Shown piece after piece: positions 893 through 57,300 of a stretch of 64,000 nucleotides of DNA (position 1 is its first letter; the number at the start of each line of letters is the position of its first letter). The notes under the pieces are model-generated. The model was given only the letters and a program-made list of their open reading frames with translations. It was not told the origin of the DNA and searched no databases. The DNA is from Guillardia theta CCMP2712 (taxonomy: Eukaryota; Protista; Cryptophyta), in NCBI RefSeq assembly GCF_000315625.1, contig NW_005434571.1, positions 14,027 through 78,026 on the forward strand. The letters run 5' to 3'. Made by a program: the position numbers and the translations under genes.

Positions 893-1861
893 NNNNNNNN
901 NNNNNNNNNNNNNNNNNNNNNNNNNNNNNNNNNNNNNNNNNNNNNNNNNNNNNNNNNNNNNNNNNNNNNNNNNNNNNNNNNNNNNNNNNNNNNNNNNNNN
1001 NNNNNNNNNNNNNNNNNNNNNNNNNNNNNNNNNNNNNNNNNNNNNNNNNNNNNNNNNNNNNNNNNNNNNNNNNNNNNNNNNNNNNNNNNNNNNNNNNNNN
1101 NNNNNNNNNNNNNNNNNNNNNNNNNNNNNNNNNNNNNNNNNNNNNNNNNNNNNNNNNNNNNNNNNNNNNNNNNNNNNNNNNNNNNNNNNNNNNNNNNNNN
1201 NNNNNNNNNNNNNNNNNNNNNNNNNNNNNNNNNNNNNNNNNNNNNNNNNNNNNNNNNNNNNNNNNNNNNNNNNNNNNNNNNNNNNNNNNNNNNNNNNNNN
1301 NNNNNNNNNNNNNNNNNNNNNNNNNNNNNNNNNNNNNNNNNNNNNNNNNNNNNNNNNNNNNNNNNNNNNNNNNNNNNNNNNNNNNNNNNNNNNNNNNNNN
1401 NNNNNNNNNNNNNNNNNNNNNNNNNNNNNNNNNNNNNNNNNNNNNNNNNNNNNNNNNNNNNNNNNNNNNNNNNNNNNNNNNNNNNNNNNNNNNNNNNNNN
1501 NNNNNNNNNNNNNNNNNNNNNNNNNNNNNNNNNNNNNNNNNNNNNNNNNNNNNNNNNNNNNNNNNNNNNNNNNNNNNNNNNNNNNNNNNNNNNNNNNNNN
1601 NNNNNNNNNNNNNNNNNNNNNNNNNNNNNNNNNNNNNNNNNNNNNNNNNNNNNNNNNNNNNNNNNNNNNNNNNNNNNNNNNNNNNNNNNNNNNNNNNNNN
1701 NNNNNNNNNNNNNNNNNNNNNNNNNNNNNNNNNNNNNNNNNNNNNNNNNNNNNNNNNNNNNNNNNNNNNNNNNNNNNNNNNNNNNNNNNNNNNNNNNNNN
1801 NNNNNNNNNNNNNNNNNNNNNNNNNNNNNNNNNNNNNNNNNNNNNNNNNNNNNNNNNNNNN
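893..1861. other. Assembly gap (N run)
   Basis: Continuous Ns. Confidence 1.
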
Positions 1862-3808
1862 TGAAATCCGGTTCGGAGGGCGACCGCAAACGATGATCTG
1901 TTTGGATTCTCAATTCACGACATTGTTACAATCAAGGGGTTCAAGATACCTCCACCGTCTCGACGACTGCTGCAGAAATAGCCTTGTCTGTTCTAAGTCA
2001 AAAACCAACCCCATCCTCCTCCTCTTCCTCCTCCTTCTCCTCCCTCCTCCCTCCTCCCTCCTGCCCTCTCGTCTATCCCTCAATCTCCTCCCTCCCTGCC
2101 TTCCTCCTCTTCTTCCCTCCTCTCACCGTCTTCGAACACGCATATCCTCCTCGAGTCGCCCAGAAGGAAGGTCTCCTTGGTGTTGCTGGGGTTCACGAGA
2201 GAGTATCCTCCTCGCAGGGTCTGGCGCAGAGCAAGGCCGGGGACACGAGGAGCTTGCAAGACTGTTGCGCACTGCGCACAGCTTGCCAGGAGGAGGAGGG
2301 GGGTAGCACGAAGCATCGCACGCATGGTTAAGTTTTGAAAGGCCTGGTATTAGGTCATTCACGCAGCCATGGGAGGAGACAACAAACAGAAGATGACAGG
2401 AATGTGTTTGCTGCGCTAGTGCATAACGCTCCCATGACTCTGTATGTAATCATAATTCTTGCAACTTGGCTAGAGTTTCAAAGATTCTCCTCATCTATCC
2501 TGATGATGCCTCGCACCTCAATGCCAATCTCTCTCCTCATCCGATCCAAAGATTGGTTGAACCTACATCTCTTGACCTTGCTTCAATCCTTTCACCTATT
2601 TCATCTTGCAAAAACAAGAAATTAAAGTTCAATCTATCTACACACTATCAGCATCGTTCTTCTCCCGTACCTTCCATCTCTGCTCTGCTCTGCTTTGCTC
2701 TCCCCTCCCCTCCCCTCCCCTCTCCTCTCCTCTCCTCTCCTCTCCTCTCCTCTCCTCTCCTCTCCTCCTTTCGTTGTGTCCTCCCCACAATCGTCAAGAG
2801 CATTCTTCTTATGTCCACCCACCCCACCTCCACATGTCCTGTAAAATCCACCCTACCCCTCAATATATAATTTTTGAATACTTCCGTGGAGGAGTTGTAC
2901 CCCCTACTTGCATTGCTTCACCGCAATAATAATGACTATAGCTGTTTTATCTAATTGATCCATTGGGAAAATTCAAGGGTGATGGTACTAGGCTCAACTA
3001 TTAATTTCTGGTACCCCCTTAATTTAAAATGTCTGTACCCCCACCCCTCTAGTTTATCCCAACACTCCTGCTGTCTCCTACGCCGGTTGTGGGAATGGGA
3101 ACCACCCTACCCCTAGAACACCAATTTGTCAGGTCTAATGGACCCCCCATAAATCACTGTCACCCCCATTTTGTATAAACAAGTACCCACCCAGTTGAAT
3201 CCGACCCCTACCCCCACAAGTTGACCCATCTTGCGACCCACCATTGACACCCCCAGGATCCAGGAATGTCGGCGGCGGACGACGCTGTATGAGGAGGAGG
3301 AGGGTACGATGACAGAGATTGAGGGAAGGAGAGGGAGAGATCAGGGAGAGCCGGGAGCAAGGTATCGGGTGCAATCTGCATATCTTCTAGGAAGTACTCG
3401 CAATGGAATGTGATGTAAGACGATCGAAATCAAAGGAGGAAGAAGATTTCACGAGCATCGTAGCAGCTCGAGCGGAGCCATAGGATGCATGCATTATGAG
3501 GGCTTCAGGGATTTACCAAATCATTGTCTGCACATGACTGACAAGGTTTGTCTCACTGAACTGAAGAGTTCATTCTTGCATGTCACATATTTCTCACACC
3601 GACAGTCTTGCTCGCTTTGTTCCAATCTCAACATATCTGGTGTCATATCCTCCAATCCACAACATCTCACCCTTTCGTTGTGTGCTTTGTGCTCAAATCT
3701 CACTTGCTACTGCAAGCGTCAGAAATTTTTAGTGTAGTTCCCAGAGACAAACAATAAGAAATTCATTTCAAGTGTAAGACCAGCCAACATCAAGCCCTTC
3801 AGTAGTTC

Positions 3809-38048: not shown

Positions 38049-38279
38049 CTAGCAAAGCGTTGATAACAGGTCGTTCACCGTCCTAGTTTGCTGCTTCTCC
38101 GTGATGGACAGTCTCTTGAAGTCAACTGTCTCAAATTCGTCAACCCACTCAGCAGCTTCCTCCTGGATGTTGAAATCGAGCATCAGGTTCAAGCTCGAAG
38201 ACACAGGAGAGATGCTTGGAGATTCTCCAAAGAAGAAGTCGAACGCTTCCTTCCTGAGAGGCTCTGCGATCTCAGCCAT
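38049..38279 (-). CDS. Microprotein family member 1 (76 aa)
   Basis: PLRKEAFDFFFGESPSISPVSSSLNLMLDF...EW; shared with the ORFs at 39863 and 42052. Confidence 0.78.
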   Translation of the reverse strand: MAEIAEPLRKEAFDFFFGESPSISPVSSSLNLMLDFNIQEEAAEWVDEFETVDFKRLSITEKQQTRTVNDLLSTLC

Positions 38280-38390
38280 CCTCTTCCGGCTACCTCGAGC
38301 ACTTCTGTGAGCTTGGGCGACCTCGTGCTGTGTGGACGTGGAGGAGCAAGCGGCTTCACGTTCTGTTTGCTTATGAGTTGGTGACCCTCA

Positions 38391-38396
38391 TTTATA
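38391..38396 (-). promoter_or_regulatory. Putative TATA box of microprotein 1
   Basis: TATAAA on the minus strand ~110 bp upstream of the ATG. Confidence 0.4.
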
Positions 38397-38829
38397 AAGA
38401 TTTAAACATAGAATGTTCGATACAGATGCCGAACGTTGAGGTTTAACTCTATTTGATAGCATTGCGATAAAAGAACCCGTCTTTTTATGTTGCAATCTAG
38501 GGGTAGTCGTATACGTGTTACACGAACCCGCCAGAGGTCCGGAGGGACATTAGCGAAAAGTATCATGATCGTCTGCTCTTCCTTCGTTGCATCTCGGTAA
38601 TGACCTCCGGGAACCACCAGCGCTGACCGGAGGTTTTCTGCCCTGAGCTCATAACGGATTGTAAGTCGTTATCATAAGACAAACATTCTGCCCACGTTTG
38701 AATCCAATTGAGTCAACGAGGCGGGTTGTTCAAACTCTACGAAAAACTTCGTGCTAGCAGCTCCGCCGGAGTAAACCCGGTGATCTCCTAAAACTACTGA
38801 GAGCCTTTCGCCTCGTTCACGTGACGTGT

Positions 38830-39340
38830 CAGATACCGCAATGCAGCATCTCAGTCCGTACGGCGCGGCATCCAGCGGAGGAGCACCAGTGGCGGCCGGC
38901 GGCGCCCGCGGCCCGCCGCGGCCGCGGGACTCCTGGACTGTCCGGCTCGCCGGGCGGCCGGACCCGGGCGGCGGCCCGGCCTGCCACCGCTGGCAGTCAC
39001 GGAGCCAGCAGTGCCGCGGCGGCCCGGTGCCCCGGCCCGTGGCCGGCGGGGCGGGTTTGGACCGTACCGGAGTCCGTGACGGACGGTGCCACGGCCCGGA
39101 TCGGACGCCGTGACGGCCCCGGGACGGTGATCGCCGGGATCATGGCTGCGGGCCCGGGGCGCCGTCCAACTTGGCAACTTGGCGCGGCAAGGCCCGGCGC
39201 GACCGGCCGCCGGTCAGGGTGTCGGAACGGGCAGTCACTGGCCGGGCACCGGCGCGGCCGCGCGGCGCGGCGGCCGAGCCTGCCGCGCCCTGACTCACTG
39301 AGTCAGTGAGGGCCGCGCCGGGCTCAGTACTACTAAGAGT
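38830..39340. repeat. GC-rich island 7
   Basis: Same vocabulary (accgtaccgg, tgactcactgagtca, aacttggcaactt). Confidence 0.75.
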
Positions 39341-39550
39341 CAATAGTGTGCAGACACCATGTCAAAACCTATGGGCAGGTTTCGGTCAGGCAGGCTATAC
39401 AGTTCAACTGTTGAACGTTCCAGCACCCCGATTCTTTCAACGGCGGTTGGCACTGCGTCAAGAGCAGCGTTTGTCTATGCCACCGATAGTACAGCGAGTC
39501 CGACTTGAAAGTTTAAATGAGTCGGATTCAGTCTGCCACTGTGTATAAGT

Positions 39551-39572
39551 CTAAACCCTAAACCCTAAACCC
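39551..39572. repeat. Interstitial telomere-like repeat (CCCTAAA/TTTAGGG) x3
   Basis: ctaaaccctaaaccctaaaccc. Confidence 0.7.
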
Positions 39573-39862
39573 TTTTTCATGCAAGGACTATGTATTGTTG
39601 AGATCATGGACGAATGGACCTCCATAGAAAATTTTTGCTCAATATCAACACTTCACGATGACTTGAGAAATCTCTCTCAAGTCTAATCGCACCTGTTCTG
39701 TTGAATTGTGCCCTATGTGCGCAGTTAGACAACACACCGACAAAAATAGGATGGAATCCTGTCCGCCTTAATGAAAGTTTCCTTTTATCACTAGAACGAA
39801 AATGAAGATGGGGTTTCTATGCAGTTGGGTTTAATGTACATAAACATACGTTCGGCCAGGTT

Positions 39863-40054
39863 CTAGGAATATGTTGGTCCCCAATTTCTTTTCAGCGAAT
39901 TTTCCTCGGGATGAGAGTCTGAAGTCCATTGCAAATCCTCCACAGCCATGCTAAAATCCAACATTAGATTCGAGCTTGATGAAACTGGAGAGACAGTCGG
40001 AGACTTTCCGTAAAAGTTTTCGAACATGTCTTTTTTGCATGGTTGATTCATCAT
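39863..40054 (-). CDS. Microprotein family member 2 (63 aa)
   Basis: PCKKDMFENFYGKSPTVSPVSSSSNLMLDF...QW. Confidence 0.7.
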   Translation of the reverse strand: MMNQPCKKDMFENFYGKSPTVSPVSSSSNLMLDFSMAVEDLQWTSDSHPEENSLKRNWGPTYS

Positions 40055-41005
40055 TTGATCTTCAGAAGGGAGACAGTAGAGGTCTTATGGATGTCCTTCT
40101 GAATAGCGTTGCGTAGTGTGCCCACTTTAGTTAACCTTCAGAAAGGGGTTAAGATCTAGGTTAAATCCATAGATGATCCTAGCTAAAGATTCCGGTTATC
40201 AATTTGTACCACAACCATTGCTTTTTTTGAACTGTCAACCACTTGTTCCATCGATGCATTCATGCGGTTGCCATGCTATGCAGAAAGAATGCAGATCTGA
40301 TGCGTATGCGAAGGTTGCGTTGCACTCATATGAGATTGTAGCTTCAGGGATATTGCATGAGCGGCTCATGCAATATCCCTGATGCTGTCAATGCAGGAAA
40401 TCAACGACATGAAACGTACAGTATGAAATCTTTTATTGCATGAACTTCCTAAATTCAAGCTCAAGCTCACGATATTTGTGTCCCCTTCAGGATTAATGTC
40501 TCCAATCCTTGGTGACTACAAATGAACTCACTGGAATCTGCATAGCTTGACACATGCACAGGAAGCGGTGACGTTAGCCCGTTGGAATATCCTCTTTACC
40601 TCTGCCTGTTCGTGAACATATGCATGTTACTATGAAAAGATGCTGTATGTTAATCATATGTACCGTTGAACATTACATTTGGATTCGTTATCATTGTCCT
40701 CGTTGAATACACAACAGGAAAGCTTTCAGCAACACAATCTTGCTGTCTCAGAGATGTTCAACAGCGAGCAACAAGAGCTGATAAAGAGTGAGGGTGAGCT
40801 CATGTGTGCAGGCTGGCATGAGTCTATGCTGACAGGATGATAGTTGATGTTATGTTGTCAGTCAGATGGAGAGGCAGAGGTACACGAGAAGGAAGTCGGA
40901 CGAGGCTGCGCACGCCATGTGTACGCTGTGTGGAACGCCCTGCCAGGGCGCCGCTCGTCGGCTTTTACCGAGAAGTCGAACCGTTGTGATTTAGCTATTC
41001 AAACG

Positions 41006-41056
41006 CTATTCAGGCCCTGAATAGTGACATAGGAAACTATTCAGAGCCTGAATAGT
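41006..41056. other. Two tandem short inverted repeats CTATTCAG-N3-CTGAATAG
   Basis: 41006-41024 and 41037-41055; identical arms, different 3-nt spacers. Confidence 0.85.
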
Positions 41057-41792
41057 GTCTGAATTCAGAGCCAAGTTAAGTAAAACTTTAGTACCTACGC
41101 TACGCAATTCAGCGCTTCCATAAGACCTCTAGTGACAGCAAGCGGTGTCGAGTATGACTGTCAGCCTGCAAGGCAAAGCACAGACAAACTCCTGTCCTTT
41201 CCTCTTGCGACTTGCTGATTGAAACCCCTTAGTCGTTCAACCTTTCCCCCACAGTCACGCGACAACAGACCAACGTACTACTGTACGTGGCTACGTTAAT
41301 TTAACCTTACCTGCTGACCATATACGTCACACGCACTCAAAACGACGCGATCTTGAGAACTGATTGACTGTCATGGCACTACAGTCATGTCCGAAACAAA
41401 CATCTACCCCCTACTTTGACCTTAGTCTCACCCCTTGTGATACTGATGCTGACCACAACGTTCTGCGGAGAGGCCTATCAGGTGTAGGGGTGGCAAGGTA
41501 CGTTTTCGGTACAAGAGAAGCAGATTTCAGGTGTCAAGGGGGGTGGGGGTACGATACATCCTTTTGATCATGCCTCACAAGAAAGATGGCGGGACATTGC
41601 TGAAACGATGGGGTCTGGGTGAATTCGGGTGGGGTCCTTTATAGCAAAAAAACTCTATCCAGATGGGTACGTAGTCAAAAGGGTGGGTACCTTCAAGGGG
41701 TAACACATACGGCTGTCAGATAGGAGCAAAGCTTAACGGCAAATCCTTTTAAAATTTATTTTAACTTCTCAAAAACAGTTTTACACAATTAG

Positions 41793-41802
41793 TATATATA
41801 AG
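41793..41802 (+). promoter_or_regulatory. Putative TATA box of microprotein 3
   Basis: tatatataag ~250 bp upstream of ATG 42052. Confidence 0.35.
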
Positions 41803-42051
41803 ATGAGTCCCTTTTTAATCCACACCCGTGCCGCCCCCCGCACCCTCATCGAATCCCTCCACGCTTGTTGTGGCATCAGCACCGCCAGGGCTGTTGAGCA
41901 GGAAGAAGCAGCCAACTGTTTCAGCTGTGGCTGATTTCCTCTGTCCTGCACAAGGAAGACTTGTGGACCGGAGCCAGCACGAGTGGAGATCGTGACCGTC
42001 TCTGAAACACTGCGATCTTTGACAAGCGGGACAACCAGCTGTGGTGAAACA

Positions 42052-42324
42052 ATGATGTCACAAGATCCACTGGACAAGGAGGCCTTTGATGCTTTTTTTG
42101 GGAAATCTCCCTCTGTCTCTCCGGTTTCCTCACATAAAAACCTGATGTTAGATTTCAACATTGGAAACTACCCAGCAGAGTGGATTGATGATTTTGAGGC
42201 GATGGATTGGCTAAAGAATTGCGATCTTGAAAGGGCAACATCGAATTCATCGGACTGTACAGATGTAGAAATGGAGGATGCGTGTAGGTTTGATTCAGTA
42301 GTTTCCAGGACAGATTCTTTTTGA
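42052..42324 (+). CDS. Microprotein family member 3 (90 aa)
   Basis: PLDKEAFDAFFGKSPSVSPVSSHKNLMLDFNI...AEWIDDFE. Confidence 0.78.
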   Translation: MMSQDPLDKEAFDAFFGKSPSVSPVSSHKNLMLDFNIGNYPAEWIDDFEAMDWLKNCDLERATSNSSDCTDVEMEDACRFDSVVSRTDSF

Positions 42325-42938: not shown

Positions 42939-45900
42939 TCACTCCGCTCGCGTGTTTCGATACGCCACGTATCGCTGGTGCCCATTGCTGTGCATGGCCC
43001 AGCTCTTGTAGTCCTTGAGCGACAGCTGCAGCTCGCACACGTGAAAGTTGACCCCCAGCCGATGAGTCTCCTCGTTGTCAAGACGGACGTTGAGACACAC
43101 GTCTCGGTATGCTCCTGACTGCTGCGACGTGAAGTCCGGATCGAACCGATTCTTAACTCGCAGGATGACGAGCTCCTGGTCCTCGCAGATCCCTTTTAAG
43201 CATCTCACGATCTCTTCCAGGCTCTCGAACACCATTGATTGCCGCACCACGTCGAGCAGCCTCCACACTTTCCCCTTGTATGACCTGTGCAGCTTCTCAA
43301 TCGACCGATCGAAGCCCTTGAGCCTTGCCCAGCCGTGTAGAGCCGCCGTCTCCTGCCCCTCATACCTCACCCACCTGATCTCACTCTCATCCCCCGCCTT
43401 CTCCTGCACAAGCCCTCCCCACCGCTTCAGCAGCTCCTTCACCTTGCGCAGGAAGGGAAGCTCGAGCAGCATCGCCTGATTGTAGAGCTGATCGAGACAA
43501 GTTATCCTCGCCGCGTCATATCCCATGGGTCGTTGCAAAGATGAGATACCATGCCCGGGCTCCCCCCTTTGCAACTGGCATATGGCACCCTTGCTCCAAG
43601 CCTCAGATCCGGAAGCGACAATCTGCTTCAACTTCTTCACTTGCCCCATGGTCCCTTGGTCTGCCGTCAGCGCTCGCCACACCTCGTTATAATACTTCAC
43701 GTCGTCTTCTATCCCCAGCCATGCTCGATGGATTGCTCGTCTTCGCATCAACTGCACAGCCATCCAGCTCACCAACAACACCAATCCGGTTATAGGAAAC
43801 TGAAAGTTCCCTCCCCCCAAAGTAATGAAGTAAAATGAAATAGAAGCAACCACGGTTATGCAAGCGTTGAAGAGAACTGTCGGCAAAAATTTCTCCTCCC
43901 AAAATACCAAAGACAGTCCTGTGGTCGAAGATCCCCAGCCTAGCAAGAAGAACAACAAGGCGACCCCCGCAGAATCTCCATGCACAGCACTGCTGATCGC
44001 GGCAGCGATCCCTAGAACACCAGTCCCCCAGAAGGCGAAGGAGAAGCACACAACTCCCATGCGAGGCCTCCCAAGAATGCTCACGATGGGGCCAGAGAAG
44101 CACCCGAGGACCACGGGGAAGAGGAAGAAGACGGTGCCAGCAGCCATGTACAGAGGGGTGACAAGGCTGATGACGTTTTCAGCTCCTCGTTGCAGGTCAG
44201 TGGGATAAGTCTCATCCCAACGGGGGATGCAGGCGGCATTGTAACGGTCCCAATCACATTTGGTACCGGACTTGAGGGTCCAGCTTGTGTTTGCCAGCTG
44301 CCAGGGGCTCCCCGATGCGGAGGTGACATCCAGCCGGAAACGGACAGGGTCTCGTCCCTCGGTTCCGGAGCGACTGTCCGTGATGAAGTAGAATGCGTTG
44401 GCTGATTCGAGACTCGGGAAAGAAAAGTAGAAGATATCCCCGTCCTCCACTCCTTGGACCGCTGAGGAGGTCTTACACCCGTTCAACATCCATCCCAGCT
44501 GAAGAGAATAGTTCCCTCCTGCTGAAACTGAGTCCTGCCTTCGTTGCAGAACTATCATCCTTGCCGATCTGACTTGAAACACTTGCTTGCGCATGTACGT
44601 TTGCCATAATCCTCCTTCCCCGAAACCGCGGACTGCATAGAAGATACCCCATATAATCAGCAGCGCCTTGAACCAGGTCTTCTGCATCGCTAGCGTGCAA
44701 GGGATGGAAGTGAAGAGCACGCTGGATGCTGATGACTTCTTCACTGCATGCTGCAGCTCCTGGAGTCTTTTTCCAAGGGTATCCCCAGCAAACAGGCATC
44801 TCTGTCTCAACAAGTCCTTGTGTCTCTCTTCGTCCGTCAAGGTGTGAGCAGCAGATCGGAAGAGTGAGTTCAGGGACCCGGCCTCCCTTCCCGTCTCCGC
44901 AAGCGTTTCAACCAGGACCCTCGAGAGTTTATGGATCTTGTGATGCTTCAGTCTCCGGATCCAAGCGGAACAATCAAGCCTCGACCAAAACAACAAGCAT
45001 CTGATGGATATGTTCACCTGATGCATTCTCCGGTACCCCTTCAAGTCTTTCAACATGCTCGTGGTGGCGGCAGATTGCAGACAAGTCAGGACTAGACGGA
45101 TTTCACACACAAATGCACAAATGCCGTAGAACCTTGTTTGCTCTGTGATCAACCGTGCCTTGAGACACACATCCCTGACGTGTCCCAAGTTTTTGACCTT
45201 GTCCCTCCCAGCGAGTCTGTTCTTCAGGCTCACAATGACCACTTCTCTGTCTTCCATCAGAGTCTGCAGACAATCTGCGATGTCTTGTATCCTATCGAAC
45301 ATGATACTCTGCCGCACTAGATCCGTATGTCTTGCAACATCTCCATGGTATTTGCGAAGAATCTTTTCGCAGCTAGCTTCAAAGCTCTTCATAGGGGTCT
45401 CTTCAAAACGAGCTGTAGACCCGTGAGCGGTCTGCAGTCTTTCAACGAGGACCAACAACTTGTCGACTAACAGTTTCTGCATCGTCACTCCCTGAGCGTT
45501 CAGTTGGTCAAAGTTCGTGATTTCCTTGGTTTCAGCAAGCGATACACTTGCAAAGGAGGTGAAGGCCTCGGATGCTGCAAACTTGGAGGGAGTGCGAAAT
45601 CTTCTCGACGAAGCAAATGTTTCGAGGGCTCGAATCCTATCCATGTCTGTCCTTGAATCCTCCTCGGTTACTGGATTGTATGCCATACGAAATTGCCGCA
45701 ACTTCGCCGTCTTGCGTGCTTTTCTGTGACAAGCCTGTGCAACTTCCTCCAGCAGCATCAAGCTTGATTCCTCTCCCTCGGATAGAAAGTCCTCCCAGAC
45801 CTTGTCGAGCTTGGCCTGGTGCATCATGGCAGACTTGCGGGAGGAAGCCCTGTGAGATTCACGGACTGCTATTAGGAAAAGAAAGAAGAACAACTCCACA

Positions 45901-47070
45901 GCTCTGATGTATGCCCCGTCTGATTTCAATGCAGCTTCGACCACGAGGAGGAGTAATGATGATGCCGCCCCGAGCTCCAACACCAAGCACTCGTGGAAGA
46001 CGAGGGGACAAGGAAACAGGAACAGTATCTGCAGCAAACAAAGTCAGGTGAGCAGGAGGAGCGCGGCTGAGCAGTACCGTGAGGCTCTCGATCAGCACAA
46101 CGTAGTCTGCCTTCAAGTTGCAGCTGCTCACCCTCACGATGAACTGAGAGATGCCAACGACGGCAGCAAGGAAGTATCCCAAGCACACGCTCTGCGCACA
46201 ATCTCATCACTCGTACATCATTGCTATCTTTGGTAACGCTCTTGCCTGCACTGACGACTTACACTTGCCCCAACTTGCGCATACAACAGCAAGCAAGAGC
46301 CCGAGCCCTTTCAACAATCGCTCAACGATGCTCGCGAAGGCAGGCCACCGGCATGTGATAGCGTTCCAATCGATCTGATACAGTTGTTTTGGCTGCCACG
46401 GAGGAAAACCCCTCGAGAAATCTTCCATGGGCACGTCTTCACCCACTGAGACAGTCGCGACGCGAGCTAAGGACAGCATGGACGGCATCACGTACACTCT
46501 CCAGTGCTCGCCATCACTAGACGACTCAAGCGTGAATTCAACGGGGAGGAGGCCACTACTTATGTTAGGGGTGATCAAGTAGAAGCCGTTGAAAGAGAGT
46601 AGCGAATCTGATCTCAGGGTCAAGGACGCTTTTGCCCCCCGTTGTACATAAAAGTGCTCCTGGTCGTTTGAGACTCCTGGCATCGGAATCATGCAATTGC
46701 CTTTCAGTACCCCAAAGGATTGTATCCCAGGAGAAGTTATTGCAGGCCCTGCCAGTCCATTCTGAAGCTTTCTTGCTGTGAAGCGAAAGTAGCGAGCGGG
46801 CCCTTCCGCTTCTTGGATGCTCCCAAACGACCATAGCGCAGATTCAAAGGGAGGTGCGAAGAATAGCAGGAAAGCAACCAGGACCAGAGCCACTCGGAAT
46901 ATCCTCGCGGAAAGAAACCAAGTGAAGGGGTGAGGTGAGCACAGAACTTCGAACAGTTTCTGCGAGGCGATCTTTGTCCACGCGGCTTCAAGAGAATCCT
47001 GCAGTCGGTGACCCTTCCCCTGGCTGCTGGCAACAAGATAGTCGAGCCATACCTGAGGAAACTCGGCCAT
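42939..47070 (-). CDS. ~1342-aa internally duplicated multi-pass membrane protein with two RelA/SpoT-like nucleotidyltransferase domains; exons 47070-46246, 46191-46078, 46028-42939
   Basis: C-terminal domain RLKGFDRSIEK-LLDVVR-RVKNRF-GAYRDV-CELQL-GHQRY; internal degenerate copy PMKSFEASCEK-HTDLVR-SLKNRL-GHVRDV-CEIRL; each preceded by a TM, a soluble loop domain and several TMs; introns of 54 nt (GC-AG) and 49 nt preserve frame. Confidence 0.85.
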
Positions 47071-54397: not shown

Positions 54398-57300
54398 GTG
54401 TCTGCCTTTTCTTGTTCTTCGACTTCTTGAAACCTTGCGATCCTCTTCTTCACCTCCTGCAATTCAAACGTCACGCAAATCCCCTTCAAACTTCCATCCT
54501 CTACATCCCCCACCTTCCCCCCTCCCCTCCTTTCCTTCAGATCCTCTGCTCTCCTCCCCCATCACTCTCTCCTCTGTCCTCCTCCGCCTCAACTCCCTCC
54601 CCTCTCCCTCTTCTCCTCTTCTTTCTCCTCACCTTCATTGTAGCTTTGAAGTTGCTAGCAGGCGCTAAGAACTTGTCGCTCATCTTGCTGATTCCAAGCT
54701 GAGAGTGAATGAAATTGAGGCCCTGAGCCTACAGTCAGCTCCTCCTCTCCTCCTTCTTCCCTCCTCCTCCTCCTCCTCCTCCTCCTCCTCCTCCTCCTCC
54801 CCTCTTGCTCCCGCCCCCCTGCTCCCCCCTCCTCATCCCATTTTTCTCCTCCTGCTCCGTTTCTTTATCTCCGTCGTCCTCCGTGTGTTGTTCCTCACGC
54901 TCTTCCTCACTTCCTTTCTTGTCCTCGCATCTATTCTCACCTCAGAGATCATCTTCAAAGCACTCGATGCCTTCGAGCCGACGCAGAGGAGGGCAAGGAA
55001 ACCTGAGAACCAGTGAGGAGGAGAAGGATGGGAGGAGGAGGAGGAGGATGGGGGGAGGAGGAGGAGGAGGAGGAGGAGGAGGAGGAGGAGGAGGTAACTG
55101 ACTTACCAGCAGCAAACGAGTCCACAAGCATGAAGGCAGTTCCAACCTGTTCCTTCAGTGTTAGCAGCTTCCTCGCCCCCTCCCCCTCTCCCGCCTTCTC
55201 TGCCTTACTTTCTCCTCGAGGTCGAAGGNNNNNNNNNNNNNNNNNNNNNNNNNNNNNNNNNNNNNNNNNNNNNNNNNNNNNNNNNNNNNNNNNNNNNNNN
55301 NNNNNNNNNNNNNNNNNNNNNNNNNNNNGCTTCCTGCATTGTTCGACCGAAATTTGGTCTAAATTTTGTGGGCGATGGGAAGTAACCGCGAGTTCCGGGG
55401 GACCATTCTGGTAACCACCATAGATGGGAGACCGTAATGCGAGGCCGTCCCGTGCTCTGTCAGTCCTGTGCTTTGCAGGGTCAAGAGTCTTCTTGGGGGT
55501 AGGGGTAGTAAAAGGAAAATGATGGGGTTATTTGATATCATTTCTTAGTCATTTAGGGGGGTAGGGGTCTAGGATGGATGAGTACGAGGGGGTACCCAAC
55601 AGGCGTAGTCTGCGGGAGCCCTTGCATGTGATGGCGGGAAGCGAGGTTGTTCATGACAGAGGGATGAGAAGAGGAGAAGAATCAGCATGATGAAGTTGGC
55701 AGTGACGAAGACGATGAAGATGCTGCGACTAGGATGAAGGGACGGAGAAGGGAGGAGGTGTAACGACGGGATGCACAGCCTGTAGGACAGGAAATTTGGC
55801 GAGGAGATTGACGTCGACGATGACAGCGGGAGAGGAGGACAAGAATTCAGAGAGGGGAGGGTGTCAGAGACCATGACAAAGATCGAGTAGTTGGTAATGC
55901 AGGTGATACTGTAAGCTCTATGCTCAAGTAGAGGGCAGACGTAGGTTGAAGACTCGTAGCAAAGCAGACACCAATGCATAGTGCCGTTCTGATCTACCTG
56001 ATTGTAATTATCTGACTCTTCTTCCTCCTTCCACAGCACCTCCTCCTCCTCTTCCTCCTCCTCCACCACCTCATCTTCCACCACCACCACCTCCCCCTCC
56101 TCTCACCGCCCATAGTCGCGGGTATCCTTCTTCGTCTCTGAAAGCCACAAAGTCCACCGAGATGTACCCGATGATCCCTTTGTCGGCGCAGACCTGAAGA
56201 GAAGGCGATGAGAAGGAAAGAAAAAGTTGGCAGGAGGAAAGGATGATGGAGGAGGGAGGAGGGAGGAGGGAGAAGGGAGGAGGGAGGAGAAAGGGAGGAG
56301 GGAGGAGGGAAGAGGGAAGAAGGAGGAGGGAGGAGAGAAGGGAAGGGAGGAGGGAGGAGGGAGGAGGGAGGAGGGAGGAGGGAAGAAATTTTCTCTTTCT
56401 TCAATCTTTCAGGGAGTTTTCTCACCTTGCCGATAGCTGTGGCTGCAGCGTTCAAGGCTTTCTTGTTTGCTGATAGCAAAACAATTCAGTCACGAACTCC
56501 TCCCACTCCTCCCCTCCCCTCTTCACTTTTCATTCCCTTCCTCTCTCTCCTCTCCTCTCCTCTCCTCTCCTCTCCTCTCCTCTCCTCTCCCCTATCATGT
56601 TCAAAGCAGCTAACCTGTCTGTTGAGGAAAGATTGCACCCATGTAATGATAATCTTGAGTGAACAGATGGTCATGCGTGGAATGAATAGAAACCTGTAAA
56701 CAAGTATGTCACCTTCACTCAAGCCCAGCGCTTTTTCATCCTCAACCCACCCCCCTGCCCCTGCCCCCGCCTTCTGCCCCTGCTCGCCCTCTCTCGCTCT
56801 CTCCGTGTTCACCTCTCCGGTGGGCAGGATGAAGAGGTTGACGCAAGGAGAGTCGACTTGCCCTCCTGCCGCTGCCTCGATGGTCCCACCGACCCGCGTG
56901 AACGTTTCTTCGTACGCCTCCCACGTGGGATAGATGTCCTGAGGTTGAAAGGTGAGGAGGAGAGAAAAAAGGAAGGAGAGGAGAGGAAGAGGAAGAGGAA
57001 GAGGAAAAGAGGAGAGGAGAGGAGGAGAGAAGAGAAGAGAAGAGAAGAGGAGAGGAGAGGAGAGGAGAGGAGAGGAGAGAAGAGCGGAGGAAGAGGAGAG
57101 GAGAAGGGCAGCGGAGAAGGAAGAGATCACTGAAGGTGGAAGATGCGGGAGGGGAGAGGAGAAGGTAGCTGCATGCTCGTAGTGTCACCTTATGTGCTAT
57201 CTGAGCTCTCTTTGGAAGAATCTGCTCGAGCTCCTCGACTACCTGTGGACAACTTTGTTAGCTCAAGGTATCCTCTTGTTCAGCCCCCCGCATTTCCCAT

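What the first reader, a model, noticed from the sequence alone, without database searches (positions are those of the whole stretch)
38049..42324. Cluster of three intronless microproteins sharing an unrecognised motif
ORFs of 76, 63 and 90 aa on both strands share P-x-x-K-[ED]-x-F-[DE]-x-F-[FY]-G-x-S-P-[ST]-[IV]-S-P-V-S-S-x-x-N-L-M-L-D-F-x(8)-W. Flanking DNA is not obviously conserved and codons differ synonymously, which suggests protein-level selection. Two have TATA-like boxes. Tandem SP sites between an aromatic helix and an LMLDF docking-like motif, plus acidic tails, suggest (inference) phospho-regulated short-lived regulators such as kinase/phosphatase inhibitors or degron-bearing immediate-early proteins. 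I do not recognise the family.
Basis: partly seen in the sequence, partly recalled or inferred. Interest (0 to 1): 0.75.

Follow-up and report, generated by a model that had tools for sequence, protein, structure and literature searches.

The report
Cryptophyte-only small-protein family, N-terminal module
The three small ORFs are real, intron-less genes of the alga Guillardia theta. They belong to an undescribed family of at least 60 small, mostly disordered proteins, found only in Guillardia and its sister genus Hanusia, that share a ~50-residue N-terminal module of unknown function.

Summary
Observation confirmed. ORFs of 76, 63 and 90 aa sit at the stated coordinates and share a ~45-residue N-terminal motif. 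The DNA flanks do not align. In the core, synonymous sites are saturated (pS 0.82-0.88) while amino acids are kept (pN 0.23-0.32).

The trio belongs to a family with 66 six-frame matches in this 87-Mb genome, mostly in small local clusters. A search of 1.84 billion protein representatives found 32 relatives. Every one whose source was looked up or matched comes from G. theta, Hanusia phi transcriptomes or one Guillardia-like metagenome. Eight one-to-one Guillardia-Hanusia ortholog pairs exist, including partners of genes B and C. Pfam, PDB and the ESM Atlas gave nothing.

AlphaFold predicts two short helices joined by an extended Pro-rich stretch and no compact fold. I read the module as a docking peptide for a shared partner, with variable tails (inference).

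Both Ser-Pro sites occur together in only 13 of 52 members, and tails are acidic in only 16 of 52.

Unexpected: in five other clusters, neighbouring genes share a 150-300 nt core at 95-98% DNA identity with sharp edges and unalignable flanks. This looks like core-limited gene conversion.

This scan has reported other Guillardia/Hanusia-only small-protein families on other DNA, but not this one.

The parts
38049..38279 (-). Gene A: 76-aa small protein with a single uninterrupted ORF. The exact protein is already in NCBI/UniRef/EukProt.
   Evidence: ORF. Exact sequence in the collection with sources NCBI, UniRef and EukProt (P0020). Sister to C plus its Hanusia ortholog in the core tree, support 0.85.
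38124..38261 (-). Conserved N-terminal module of A (Pro7 to Val52): aromatic helix, Pro-rich extended stretch, N-L-x-x-D-F, then W-x-D-E-F-E.
   Evidence: Alignments; family logo.
39863..40054 (-). Gene B: 63-aa small protein, not annotated in this form. It has the first helix, the Pro-rich stretch and N-L-x-x-D-F, but lacks the second acidic-aromatic helix.
   Evidence: ORF. Exact sequence absent from the 15-billion collection. Orthologs are P0011 (Hanusia phi, tree support 0.93) and P0025/L053 (ENA metagenome). Against L053 the CDS and 3' flank align with only in-frame indels, while DNA more than about 40 nt upstream of the ATG does not align.
39926..40042 (-). Conserved module of B (Pro5 to Trp43).
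42052..42324 (+). Gene C: 90-aa small protein, not annotated in this form. Translation starts at the ATG at 42052, not at the mechanical GTG at 41983.
   Evidence: ORF. Exact sequence absent from the collection. Hanusia phi protein P0009 is also 90 aa, 67% identical over 100% of the length, with the same start and the same last residue. Tree support 0.90.
42067..42204 (+). Conserved module of C (Pro6 to Met51). AlphaFold helix 1 covers residues 9-16 and helix 2 starts at residue 43.
   Evidence: Structure predictions; logo.

Best explanation
A, B and C are three old, independently maintained, intron-less protein-coding genes. They belong to a family restricted to the Guillardia/Hanusia lineage, with at least 60 loci in G. 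theta. Members are small (53-175 aa, median 123), mostly net-acidic and largely disordered, and have no obvious hydrophobic signal peptide. The defining feature is an N-terminal module of about 50 residues placed 7-27 residues after the start Met in most members. It has four elements: (1) an amphipathic aromatic helix, K-x-x-F-x-x-[FL]-[FYW]-G; (2) an extended stretch, S-[SC]-P-x-x-[SAC]-P-V-[ST]; (3) N-L-x-x-D-F; (4) after 8-12 variable, often acidic residues, a second helix, [WF]-x-[DQ]-D-[FWY]-E-x-[LMI]. My reading is that this module is a composite docking peptide that folds on a common, conserved cellular partner, and that the divergent tails give each paralog its own output or cargo. Shown: the genes, the family, its taxonomic limits, purifying selection, ancient divergence, orthologs among Hanusia transcriptome-derived proteins, and the lack of a predicted compact fold. 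Inferred: the docking mechanism, the existence of a shared partner and the cytosolic or nuclear location.
For: Family size: 55 and then 66 six-frame matches in the own genome, best E = 1e-31. Distribution: 32 hits among 1.84e9 representatives, none longer than 231 aa, so there are no fusions to known domains. All hits whose source was looked up or matched are G. theta, Hanusia phi or ENA PRJEB17505. Selection: core pS 0.82-0.88 against pN 0.23-0.32 within the trio. Two close ortholog pairs give omega 0.34 and 0.40, with gap-free CDS while the flanks carry indels. The core tree holds eight one-to-one G. theta-H. phi pairs. Logo: F14 in 58/58, G19 in 59/59, V27 in 58/59, N32 in 53/58, L33 in 54/58, D36 in 50/58, F37 in 49/58. 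Structure: pLDDT 64 and 73, pTM 0.26 and 0.25, only two helices with an extended middle. There is no recurrent neighbouring gene family in 20 x 10-kb contexts, so these are stand-alone genes. The N-L-x-x-D-F-like element recurs a second time in some tails (L004/P0018, and the C-terminus of P0024, P0028 and P0029), as expected of a modular peptide motif.
Against: No partner is known and no binding was tested. The nine or so conserved aromatic and aliphatic positions could equally form the core of a small folded or self-assembling domain that AlphaFold cannot model from 27-37 sequences. I obtained no direct transcript or peptide evidence for the three G. theta copies themselves: exact-protein look-ups were blank. 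Expression is inferred from Hanusia orthologs. Gene B lacks the second helix, so the module is not indivisible.
Confidence: 0.55

Rival explanations
1. The conserved ~50 residues form a small autonomous folded or self-assembling domain (a structural or scaffold protein), not a docking peptide.
For: The invariant positions are mostly aromatic or aliphatic plus Gly and Pro, as in a mini-domain core. pLDDT reaches 78-87 in the first 20 residues of the core-only model.
Against: pTM is 0.25-0.26 and no tertiary contacts are predicted; the middle 30 residues are modelled as extended. Gene B and several paralogs lack helix 2 (motif found in 34 of 52). No PDB sequence relative exists.
Confidence: 0.15
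2. One reading: phospho-regulated, short-lived regulators (kinase or phosphatase inhibitors, or degron-bearing immediate-early proteins) with tandem Ser-Pro sites between an aromatic helix and an LMLDF docking motif, plus acidic tails.
For: A, B and C and their Hanusia orthologs do carry two S-P sites. Position 28, after P-V, is Ser or Thr in 58 of 59 cores and could be a non-proline-directed phosphosite. The proteins are small and disordered.
Against: The Ser before each Pro is replaced by Cys or Ala in about half of the family: S34/C13 at the first site and S28/A23/C7 at the second. Both SP sites occur together in only 13 of 52 members. Tails are acidic in only 16 of 52. No similarity to any known inhibitor family.
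Confidence: 0.1
3. Conserved leader plus variable cargo: the N-terminal module is a recognition leader for a processing, modification or unconventional targeting machinery, and the variable, sometimes Cys-rich tails are the functional products (a RiPP-precursor-like or effector-like architecture).
For: The conserved part is always N-terminal. Tails vary widely in length and composition, and some hold 5-8 Cys. Five clusters keep the core near-identical while everything else differs.
Against: No recurrent neighbouring enzyme or other gene family appears next to the clusters. No hydrophobic signal peptide was evident on reading the sequences. Tails are conserved to the last residue between some Guillardia-Hanusia orthologs (L005 vs P0015, C vs P0009), unlike hypervariable core peptides. 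The tail omega of about 0.45 indicates constraint, not diversifying selection.
Confidence: 0.07
4. Not genes: a dispersed repeat, a transposon fragment, or the first exons of longer spliced genes.
For: The family has many copies, some in tandem arrays with whole-unit identity (C4, C130, C148). A few copies are broken: C4:357025 has an in-frame TGA and no start, and C76:285589 has no start.
Against: pN is far below pS. Flanks are unalignable. No transposon-like neighbouring ORFs recur. There are no hits in IMG/VR. Hanusia-derived ORFs and most NCBI models equal the uninterrupted genomic ORFs. No hit in the 1.84e9 library exceeds 231 aa.
Confidence: 0.03

Closest known systems
Other Guillardia/Hanusia-restricted small-protein families noted by this scan (s1-435488, s1-432772, s1-446765, s1-450608)
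   Same: Same genome and same taxonomic restriction. They have similar size (40-150 members), small mostly disordered proteins, one conserved module next to variable sequence, and local clusters. One of them is also described as a near-invariant cassette beside hypervariable sequence.
   Different: Their motifs differ (for example [NS]FVLxNILxAR, or C-terminal cassettes) and I did not test any relationship. Here the conserved module is N-terminal. These are unchecked AI notes.
Short-linear-motif docking peptides with acidic-aromatic helices (Pex5 WxxxF/Y repeats, Atg8-interacting LIR/AIM, PCNA PIP box, acidic activation domains); recalled from memory, so leads only
   Same: Aromatic residues at i, i+3 and i+4 in short helices set in acidic, disordered sequence. 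Positions 49-53 fit W-x-x-x-F. Positions 53-56 preceded by D-D fit the LIR core in many members (for example F-E-T-V in gene A). Positions 11-18 echo a PIP box.
   Different: No canonical consensus is fully met. The PIP positions 1 and 4 are K/L/M and F instead of Q and I/L/M. The LIR end residue is Met in gene C, and gene B lacks the element. The segment is predicted helical rather than extended.
Amanita MSDIN-type precursor families (conserved leader, variable remainder); recalled from memory
   Same: A large, lineage-restricted family of very small genes with a conserved N-terminal part and a variable remainder.
   Different: The conserved part here is about 50 residues and the tails are 5-109 residues. 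Tails are conserved between orthologs, and I found no associated processing-enzyme gene and no sequence similarity.

Membership tests
Any Pfam-A family | Match to a curated profile at or near its gathering score | tested here: not met
   No families for A, B or C at E <= 10. Among 27 members only five unrelated single-member hits appeared, with E = 0.09-0.24.
Any protein with a solved structure | Sequence-profile match to a PDB chain | tested here: not met
   hmmsearch of profile A4 against 177,635 distinct PDB sequences gave 0 hits at E <= 10.
   First site S34/C13/other 12; second site S28/A23/C7 among 59 cores. Both SP sites in 13 of 52 members and neither in 25 of 52.
   Needs phosphoproteomics or pulse-chase.
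PCNA-interacting PIP box | Q-x-x-[ILM]-x-x-[FY]-[FY] | tested here: not met
   Logo positions 11-18: position 11 is K26/L10/M8/R4 (Gln is not among its five commonest states); position 14 is Phe in 58/58, not I/L/M. Only the aromatic pair fits: F40/L13 at 17 and F33/Y13/W8 at 18.
Atg8-interacting motif (LIR/AIM) | [WFY]-x-x-[LIV] preceded by acidic residues, bound as an extended strand | tested here: inconclusive
   Position 53 is aromatic in 47/52, position 56 is L/M/I in 35/50, and positions 51-52 are mostly D. Gene A fits (F-E-T-V), gene C ends in Met and gene B lacks the element. The segment is predicted helical. Binding was not testable.
Pex5-type diaromatic motif | W-x-x-x-[FY] in an amphipathic helix that binds the Pex14 N-terminal domain | tested here: inconclusive
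   Positions 49 and 53 are [WF] in 47/54 and [FWY] in 47/52, in a predicted helix. The pattern is short and generic, and binding was not testable.
RiPP-type precursor family (conserved leader, hypervariable core) | Hypervariable product region, and processing or modifying enzyme genes associated with the family | tested here: not met
   No recurrent neighbouring gene family in 20 x 10-kb contexts. Tails are conserved between Guillardia and Hanusia orthologs and have omega of about 0.45 in close orthologs.
Transposable element or dispersed repeat | Similarity extending into flanks, element-type ORFs nearby, neutral substitution pattern | tested here: not met
   Flanks are unalignable. pN is far below pS. 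No recurrent neighbouring ORFs. No IMG/VR relatives.

The most novel reading that the evidence does not exclude
The family may be a conserved-handle, variable-tail system. Core-limited gene conversion would keep a common docking handle uniform while the start leaders, tails and promoters of neighbouring genes diverge freely. That would give the cell a repertoire of adaptors (or processed peptides) that plug different outputs into one hub, for example in self/non-self, mating or antiviral recognition. The same logic might underlie the several other Guillardia/Hanusia-only small-protein families.
Probability: 0.1. Interest if true: 0.8.

Novelty: categorically new. Interest (0 to 1): 0.45.

Why it matters
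No protein family, structure or paper that I could find covers this module, although a dozen members sit in NCBI as 'hypothetical protein GUITHDRAFT_...'. Two of the three window genes are missing from the annotation in this form. Together with the other lineage-only small-protein families noted in this genome, the finding shows that the model cryptophyte carries a sizeable, largely unannotated layer of small disordered proteins that has been retained since before the Guillardia-Hanusia split. The sharp-edged, core-only DNA identity between neighbouring genes is a clean natural example of homology-limited concerted evolution and gives a handle on recombination in cryptophyte nuclei. 'Categorically new' refers to the sequence family only. 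No new mechanism has been demonstrated, and taxon-restricted small-protein families are common in protists, so the interest is moderate.

Tried and rejected
- Pfam on the trio and on 27 members, a PDB profile search and the ESM Atlas gave nothing usable.
- Pattern scans of JGI metagenome contigs and IMG/VR found pattern matches, but none was confirmed by tblastn.
- Literature searches for motif strings, GUITHDRAFT identifiers and the ENA project number found nothing relevant.
- Link to the neighbouring alarmone-synthetase-like membrane-protein family: 85 domain matches genome-wide, but only 2 of about 25 small-gene clusters (C103 and C30) lie within 10 kb of one. My rough chance expectation is about 0.3, so I rejected this as a general module.
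- Shared upstream cis-element: the best k-mers occur in only 6-12 of 29 non-redundant upstream regions and have no positional consistency. Rejected.
- A weak fourth hit at window 2589-2645 (E = 0.16-1.9) translates to low-complexity sequence with a stop. Rejected.
- Exact-protein look-ups for A, B and C in assembled public runs were blank, so there is no direct transcript evidence for these three loci.
- I did not run fold search, because pTM 0.25 would give meaningless matches.
Full report
**What is there**

The window is contig C103:14027-78026 of an 87.1-Mb, 669-contig genome. Its proteins carry the NCBI name Guillardia theta CCMP2712.
- A: 38049-38279(-), 76 aa.
- B: 39863-40054(-), 63 aa.
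- C: 42052-42324(+), 90 aa. The ORF tool lists C from a mechanical GTG at 41983.

Within the 64-kb window the pairwise tblastn E-values are 1.7e-13 (A-C), 3.6e-5 (A-B) and 1.2e-5 (B-C), and there is no fourth copy. A weak hit at 2589-2645 is low-complexity sequence with a stop.

**Coding sequence, not a repeat**

A DNA alignment with 300-nt flanks shows similarity only over about 130 nt, and the repeat finder does not see these genes as DNA repeats. Over the 39 core codons, pS is 0.82-0.88 (saturated) and pN is 0.23-0.32.

**A large family**

A profile of the trio finds 55 six-frame matches in the own genome. A profile of 27 members finds 66, with best E = 1e-31. All lie in open frames of at most about 330 codons. 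Most sit in small local clusters on contigs C4, C10, C38, C68, C76, C125, C130, C148, C158 and C256.

The motif's anchor Phe lies 7-27 residues after the first in-frame Met in most members. From 59 unique cores the family signature is:
- P8, K11, F14 (58/58), [FL]17, [FYW]18, G19 (59/59).
- S20, [SC]21, P22, [SAC]25, P26, V27 (58/59), [ST]28.
- N32, L33, D36, F37.
- After 8-12 variable residues: [WF]49, [DQ]51, D52, [FWY]53, E54, [LMI]56.

ORFs are 53-175 aa (median 123), and 41 of 52 are net acidic overall.

**Distribution**

The word-index search with the family alignment returned 11 proteins. The full HMMER scan of 1.84 billion cluster representatives returned 32, none longer than 231 aa, so the module is never fused to a known domain. 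Source look-ups and matches to genomic ORFs place the hits in three sources:
- G. theta (NCBI 'hypothetical protein GUITHDRAFT_...').
- Hanusia phi (MMETSP and EukProt; several records are named as transcripts).
- One ENA metagenome project (PRJEB17505), whose contigs are 86-92% identical to G. theta DNA.

JGI metagenome contigs and IMG/VR gave no confirmed relative. Pfam, PDB and the ESM Atlas gave nothing.

Protein A is already in NCBI and UniRef. The exact B and C proteins are not in the 15-billion collection, so they are not annotated in this form.

**Orthology and expression**

Hanusia protein P0009 is 90 aa, 67% identical to C over its whole length, with the same start and the same last residue. 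P0011 and the ENA protein P0025 match B. A FastTree of 64 core columns shows eight one-to-one Guillardia-Hanusia pairs. These include C-P0009 (support 0.90) and B-P0011 (0.93). A is sister to C plus P0009 (0.85), and B is distant from both. The family had therefore split into at least eight lineages before the two genera diverged, and each lineage was kept.

Because several Hanusia proteins are named as transcriptome ORFs and are colinear with the uninterrupted genomic ORFs, the coding regions are intron-less and orthologs are expressed. For comparison, 79% of G. theta genes have introns, with 5.3 per gene on average (PMC6260743).

Two close ortholog pairs with the ENA contigs give omega 0.40 and 0.34 (core about 0.18-0.34, tail about 0.44-0.48). 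Their CDS is gap-free while the flanks carry indels. At locus B the ENA ortholog aligns only from about 40 nt before the ATG to just past the contig's end, with in-frame indels in the tail.

I could not obtain direct transcript evidence for the three G. theta loci.

**Structure**

AlphaFold2 on full-length C with 27 sequences gives pLDDT 64 and pTM 0.26. On the 61-residue core with 37 sequences it gives pLDDT 73 and pTM 0.25. Both predict one helix over K-E-A-F-D-A-F-F, a second helix from the Trp onward and an extended middle, with no compact fold.

**Context**

In 20 x 10-kb contexts plus 20 kb of the window, no other ORF family recurs next to the small genes. No upstream k-mer is shared in a positionally consistent way. 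Only the C103 and C30 clusters lie near one, so I do not regard the two as a module.

**Interpretation**

Shown:
- The genes are real.
- The family is undescribed, lineage-restricted and selectively maintained.
- The N-terminal module shows no predicted compact fold.

Inferred (about 0.4-0.55): the module is a composite docking peptide for a common partner, and the tails give paralog-specific function. A second N-L-x-x-D-F-like element in some tails (L004/P0018, and the C-termini of P0024, P0028 and P0029) fits a modular peptide motif.

From memory, parts of the module resemble a Pex5-type W-x-x-x-F motif, an Atg8-interacting motif and, loosely, a PIP box. None is fully met (see the membership tests), and such patterns are frequent by chance.

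The two Ser-Pro sites are a feature of this subgroup only, and acidic tails are not general. The Ser/Thr after P-V (58/59) remains a possible non-proline-directed site.

**An unexpected pattern elsewhere in the family**

Neighbouring genes share only the core at 95.5-98% DNA identity in five clusters:
- C158 (two genes 9 kb apart).
- C76:284-289 kb (three genes).
- C10.
- C125 (an inverted pair).
- C76:171-173 kb.

The shared tracts are 152-297 nt long, running from about -18 to -84 nt to about +134 to +258 nt relative to the anchor Phe codon. The edges are sharp. A sensitive blastn (word 7, E <= 0.01) over 600 nt upstream and 900 nt downstream finds essentially nothing else.

Summed over the cluster-mate pairs compared (which also include some whole-unit duplicates), pS is 0.03 in the core and 0.33 in the tails. 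Purifying selection on the protein cannot explain this difference. The simplest reading is recurrent gene conversion whose tracts are bounded by the only homology left; copying of a cassette is the alternative.

Other clusters (C4, C130, C148, C78) are ordinary recent whole-unit duplicates. The window trio shows no such homogenisation.

**Earlier notes of this scan**

The scan describes several other Guillardia/Hanusia-only small-protein families on other DNA of this genome, one of them with a near-invariant cassette. I did not test these notes. They suggest this family is one instance of a wider phenomenon.

**Verdict**

The sequence family is new and its function is unknown. Interest is moderate.

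Noticed in passing
L040:4840-5169 vs L041:4827-5156 (C158); L038 (C76, three genes); L042 (C10); L051 (C125); L047 (C76): Neighbouring family genes share a 152-297 nt core at 95.5-98% DNA identity with sharp edges. Start leaders, tails, promoters and 3' flanks are unalignable. Summed over the cluster-mate pairs compared, core pS is 0.03 and tail pS is 0.33. Most simply explained by homology-limited gene conversion.
   Followed up: yes
window 38800-39400: A GC-rich island (68-78% G+C against about 40-50% around it) lies between genes A and B. It is full of overlapping mechanical ORFs on both strands. Earlier notes describe similar islands in this genome.
   Followed up: no
window 42939-47070 (-) and G000:C30:477356-490310: A gene with two alarmone-synthetase-like domains lies 615 nt from the 3' end of gene C, in convergent orientation. 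On C30 another family member (481893-482132) sits between copies of the same large family. Only 2 of about 25 clusters show this adjacency, so it is probably coincidence or inherited neighbourhood.
   Followed up: partly
P0024, P0028, P0029 (C-termini); L004:1462-1836 and P0018 (tail): A subfamily with Cys-rich tails ends in a conserved W-G-D-L-V-L-D-F-E-I. Another member carries F-M-M-D-F-S-M in its tail. Both echo the N-L-x-x-D-F element of the core, so that element seems able to act, or be duplicated, on its own.
   Followed up: no
L026:1396-1665 (C43:283943-284074): This member has an internal tandem duplication of the first half of the module: P-T-S-K-x-E-F-E-L-F-F-G occurs twice, 17 residues apart.
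   Followed up: no
G000:C4:357025-357441; G000:C76:285589-285792; C38 and C68 matches: Some copies look broken. The fourth C4 copy has an in-frame TGA and no start codon before the motif. One C76 copy has no in-frame Met. Several C38 and C68 matches contain stops. The family therefore also decays.
   Followed up: partly
window 40055-40500 vs L053:1-460: At locus B the Guillardia-like ENA contig aligns well in the CDS and 3' flank but not at all more than about 40 nt upstream of the ATG. Upstream flanks of two other family genes align at 86-90%. The promoter region of B has been replaced or scrambled in one lineage.
   Followed up: partly
window 893-1861 and 55229-55328: Runs of N (969 and 100 bases): assembly gaps or withheld stretches.
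   Followed up: no
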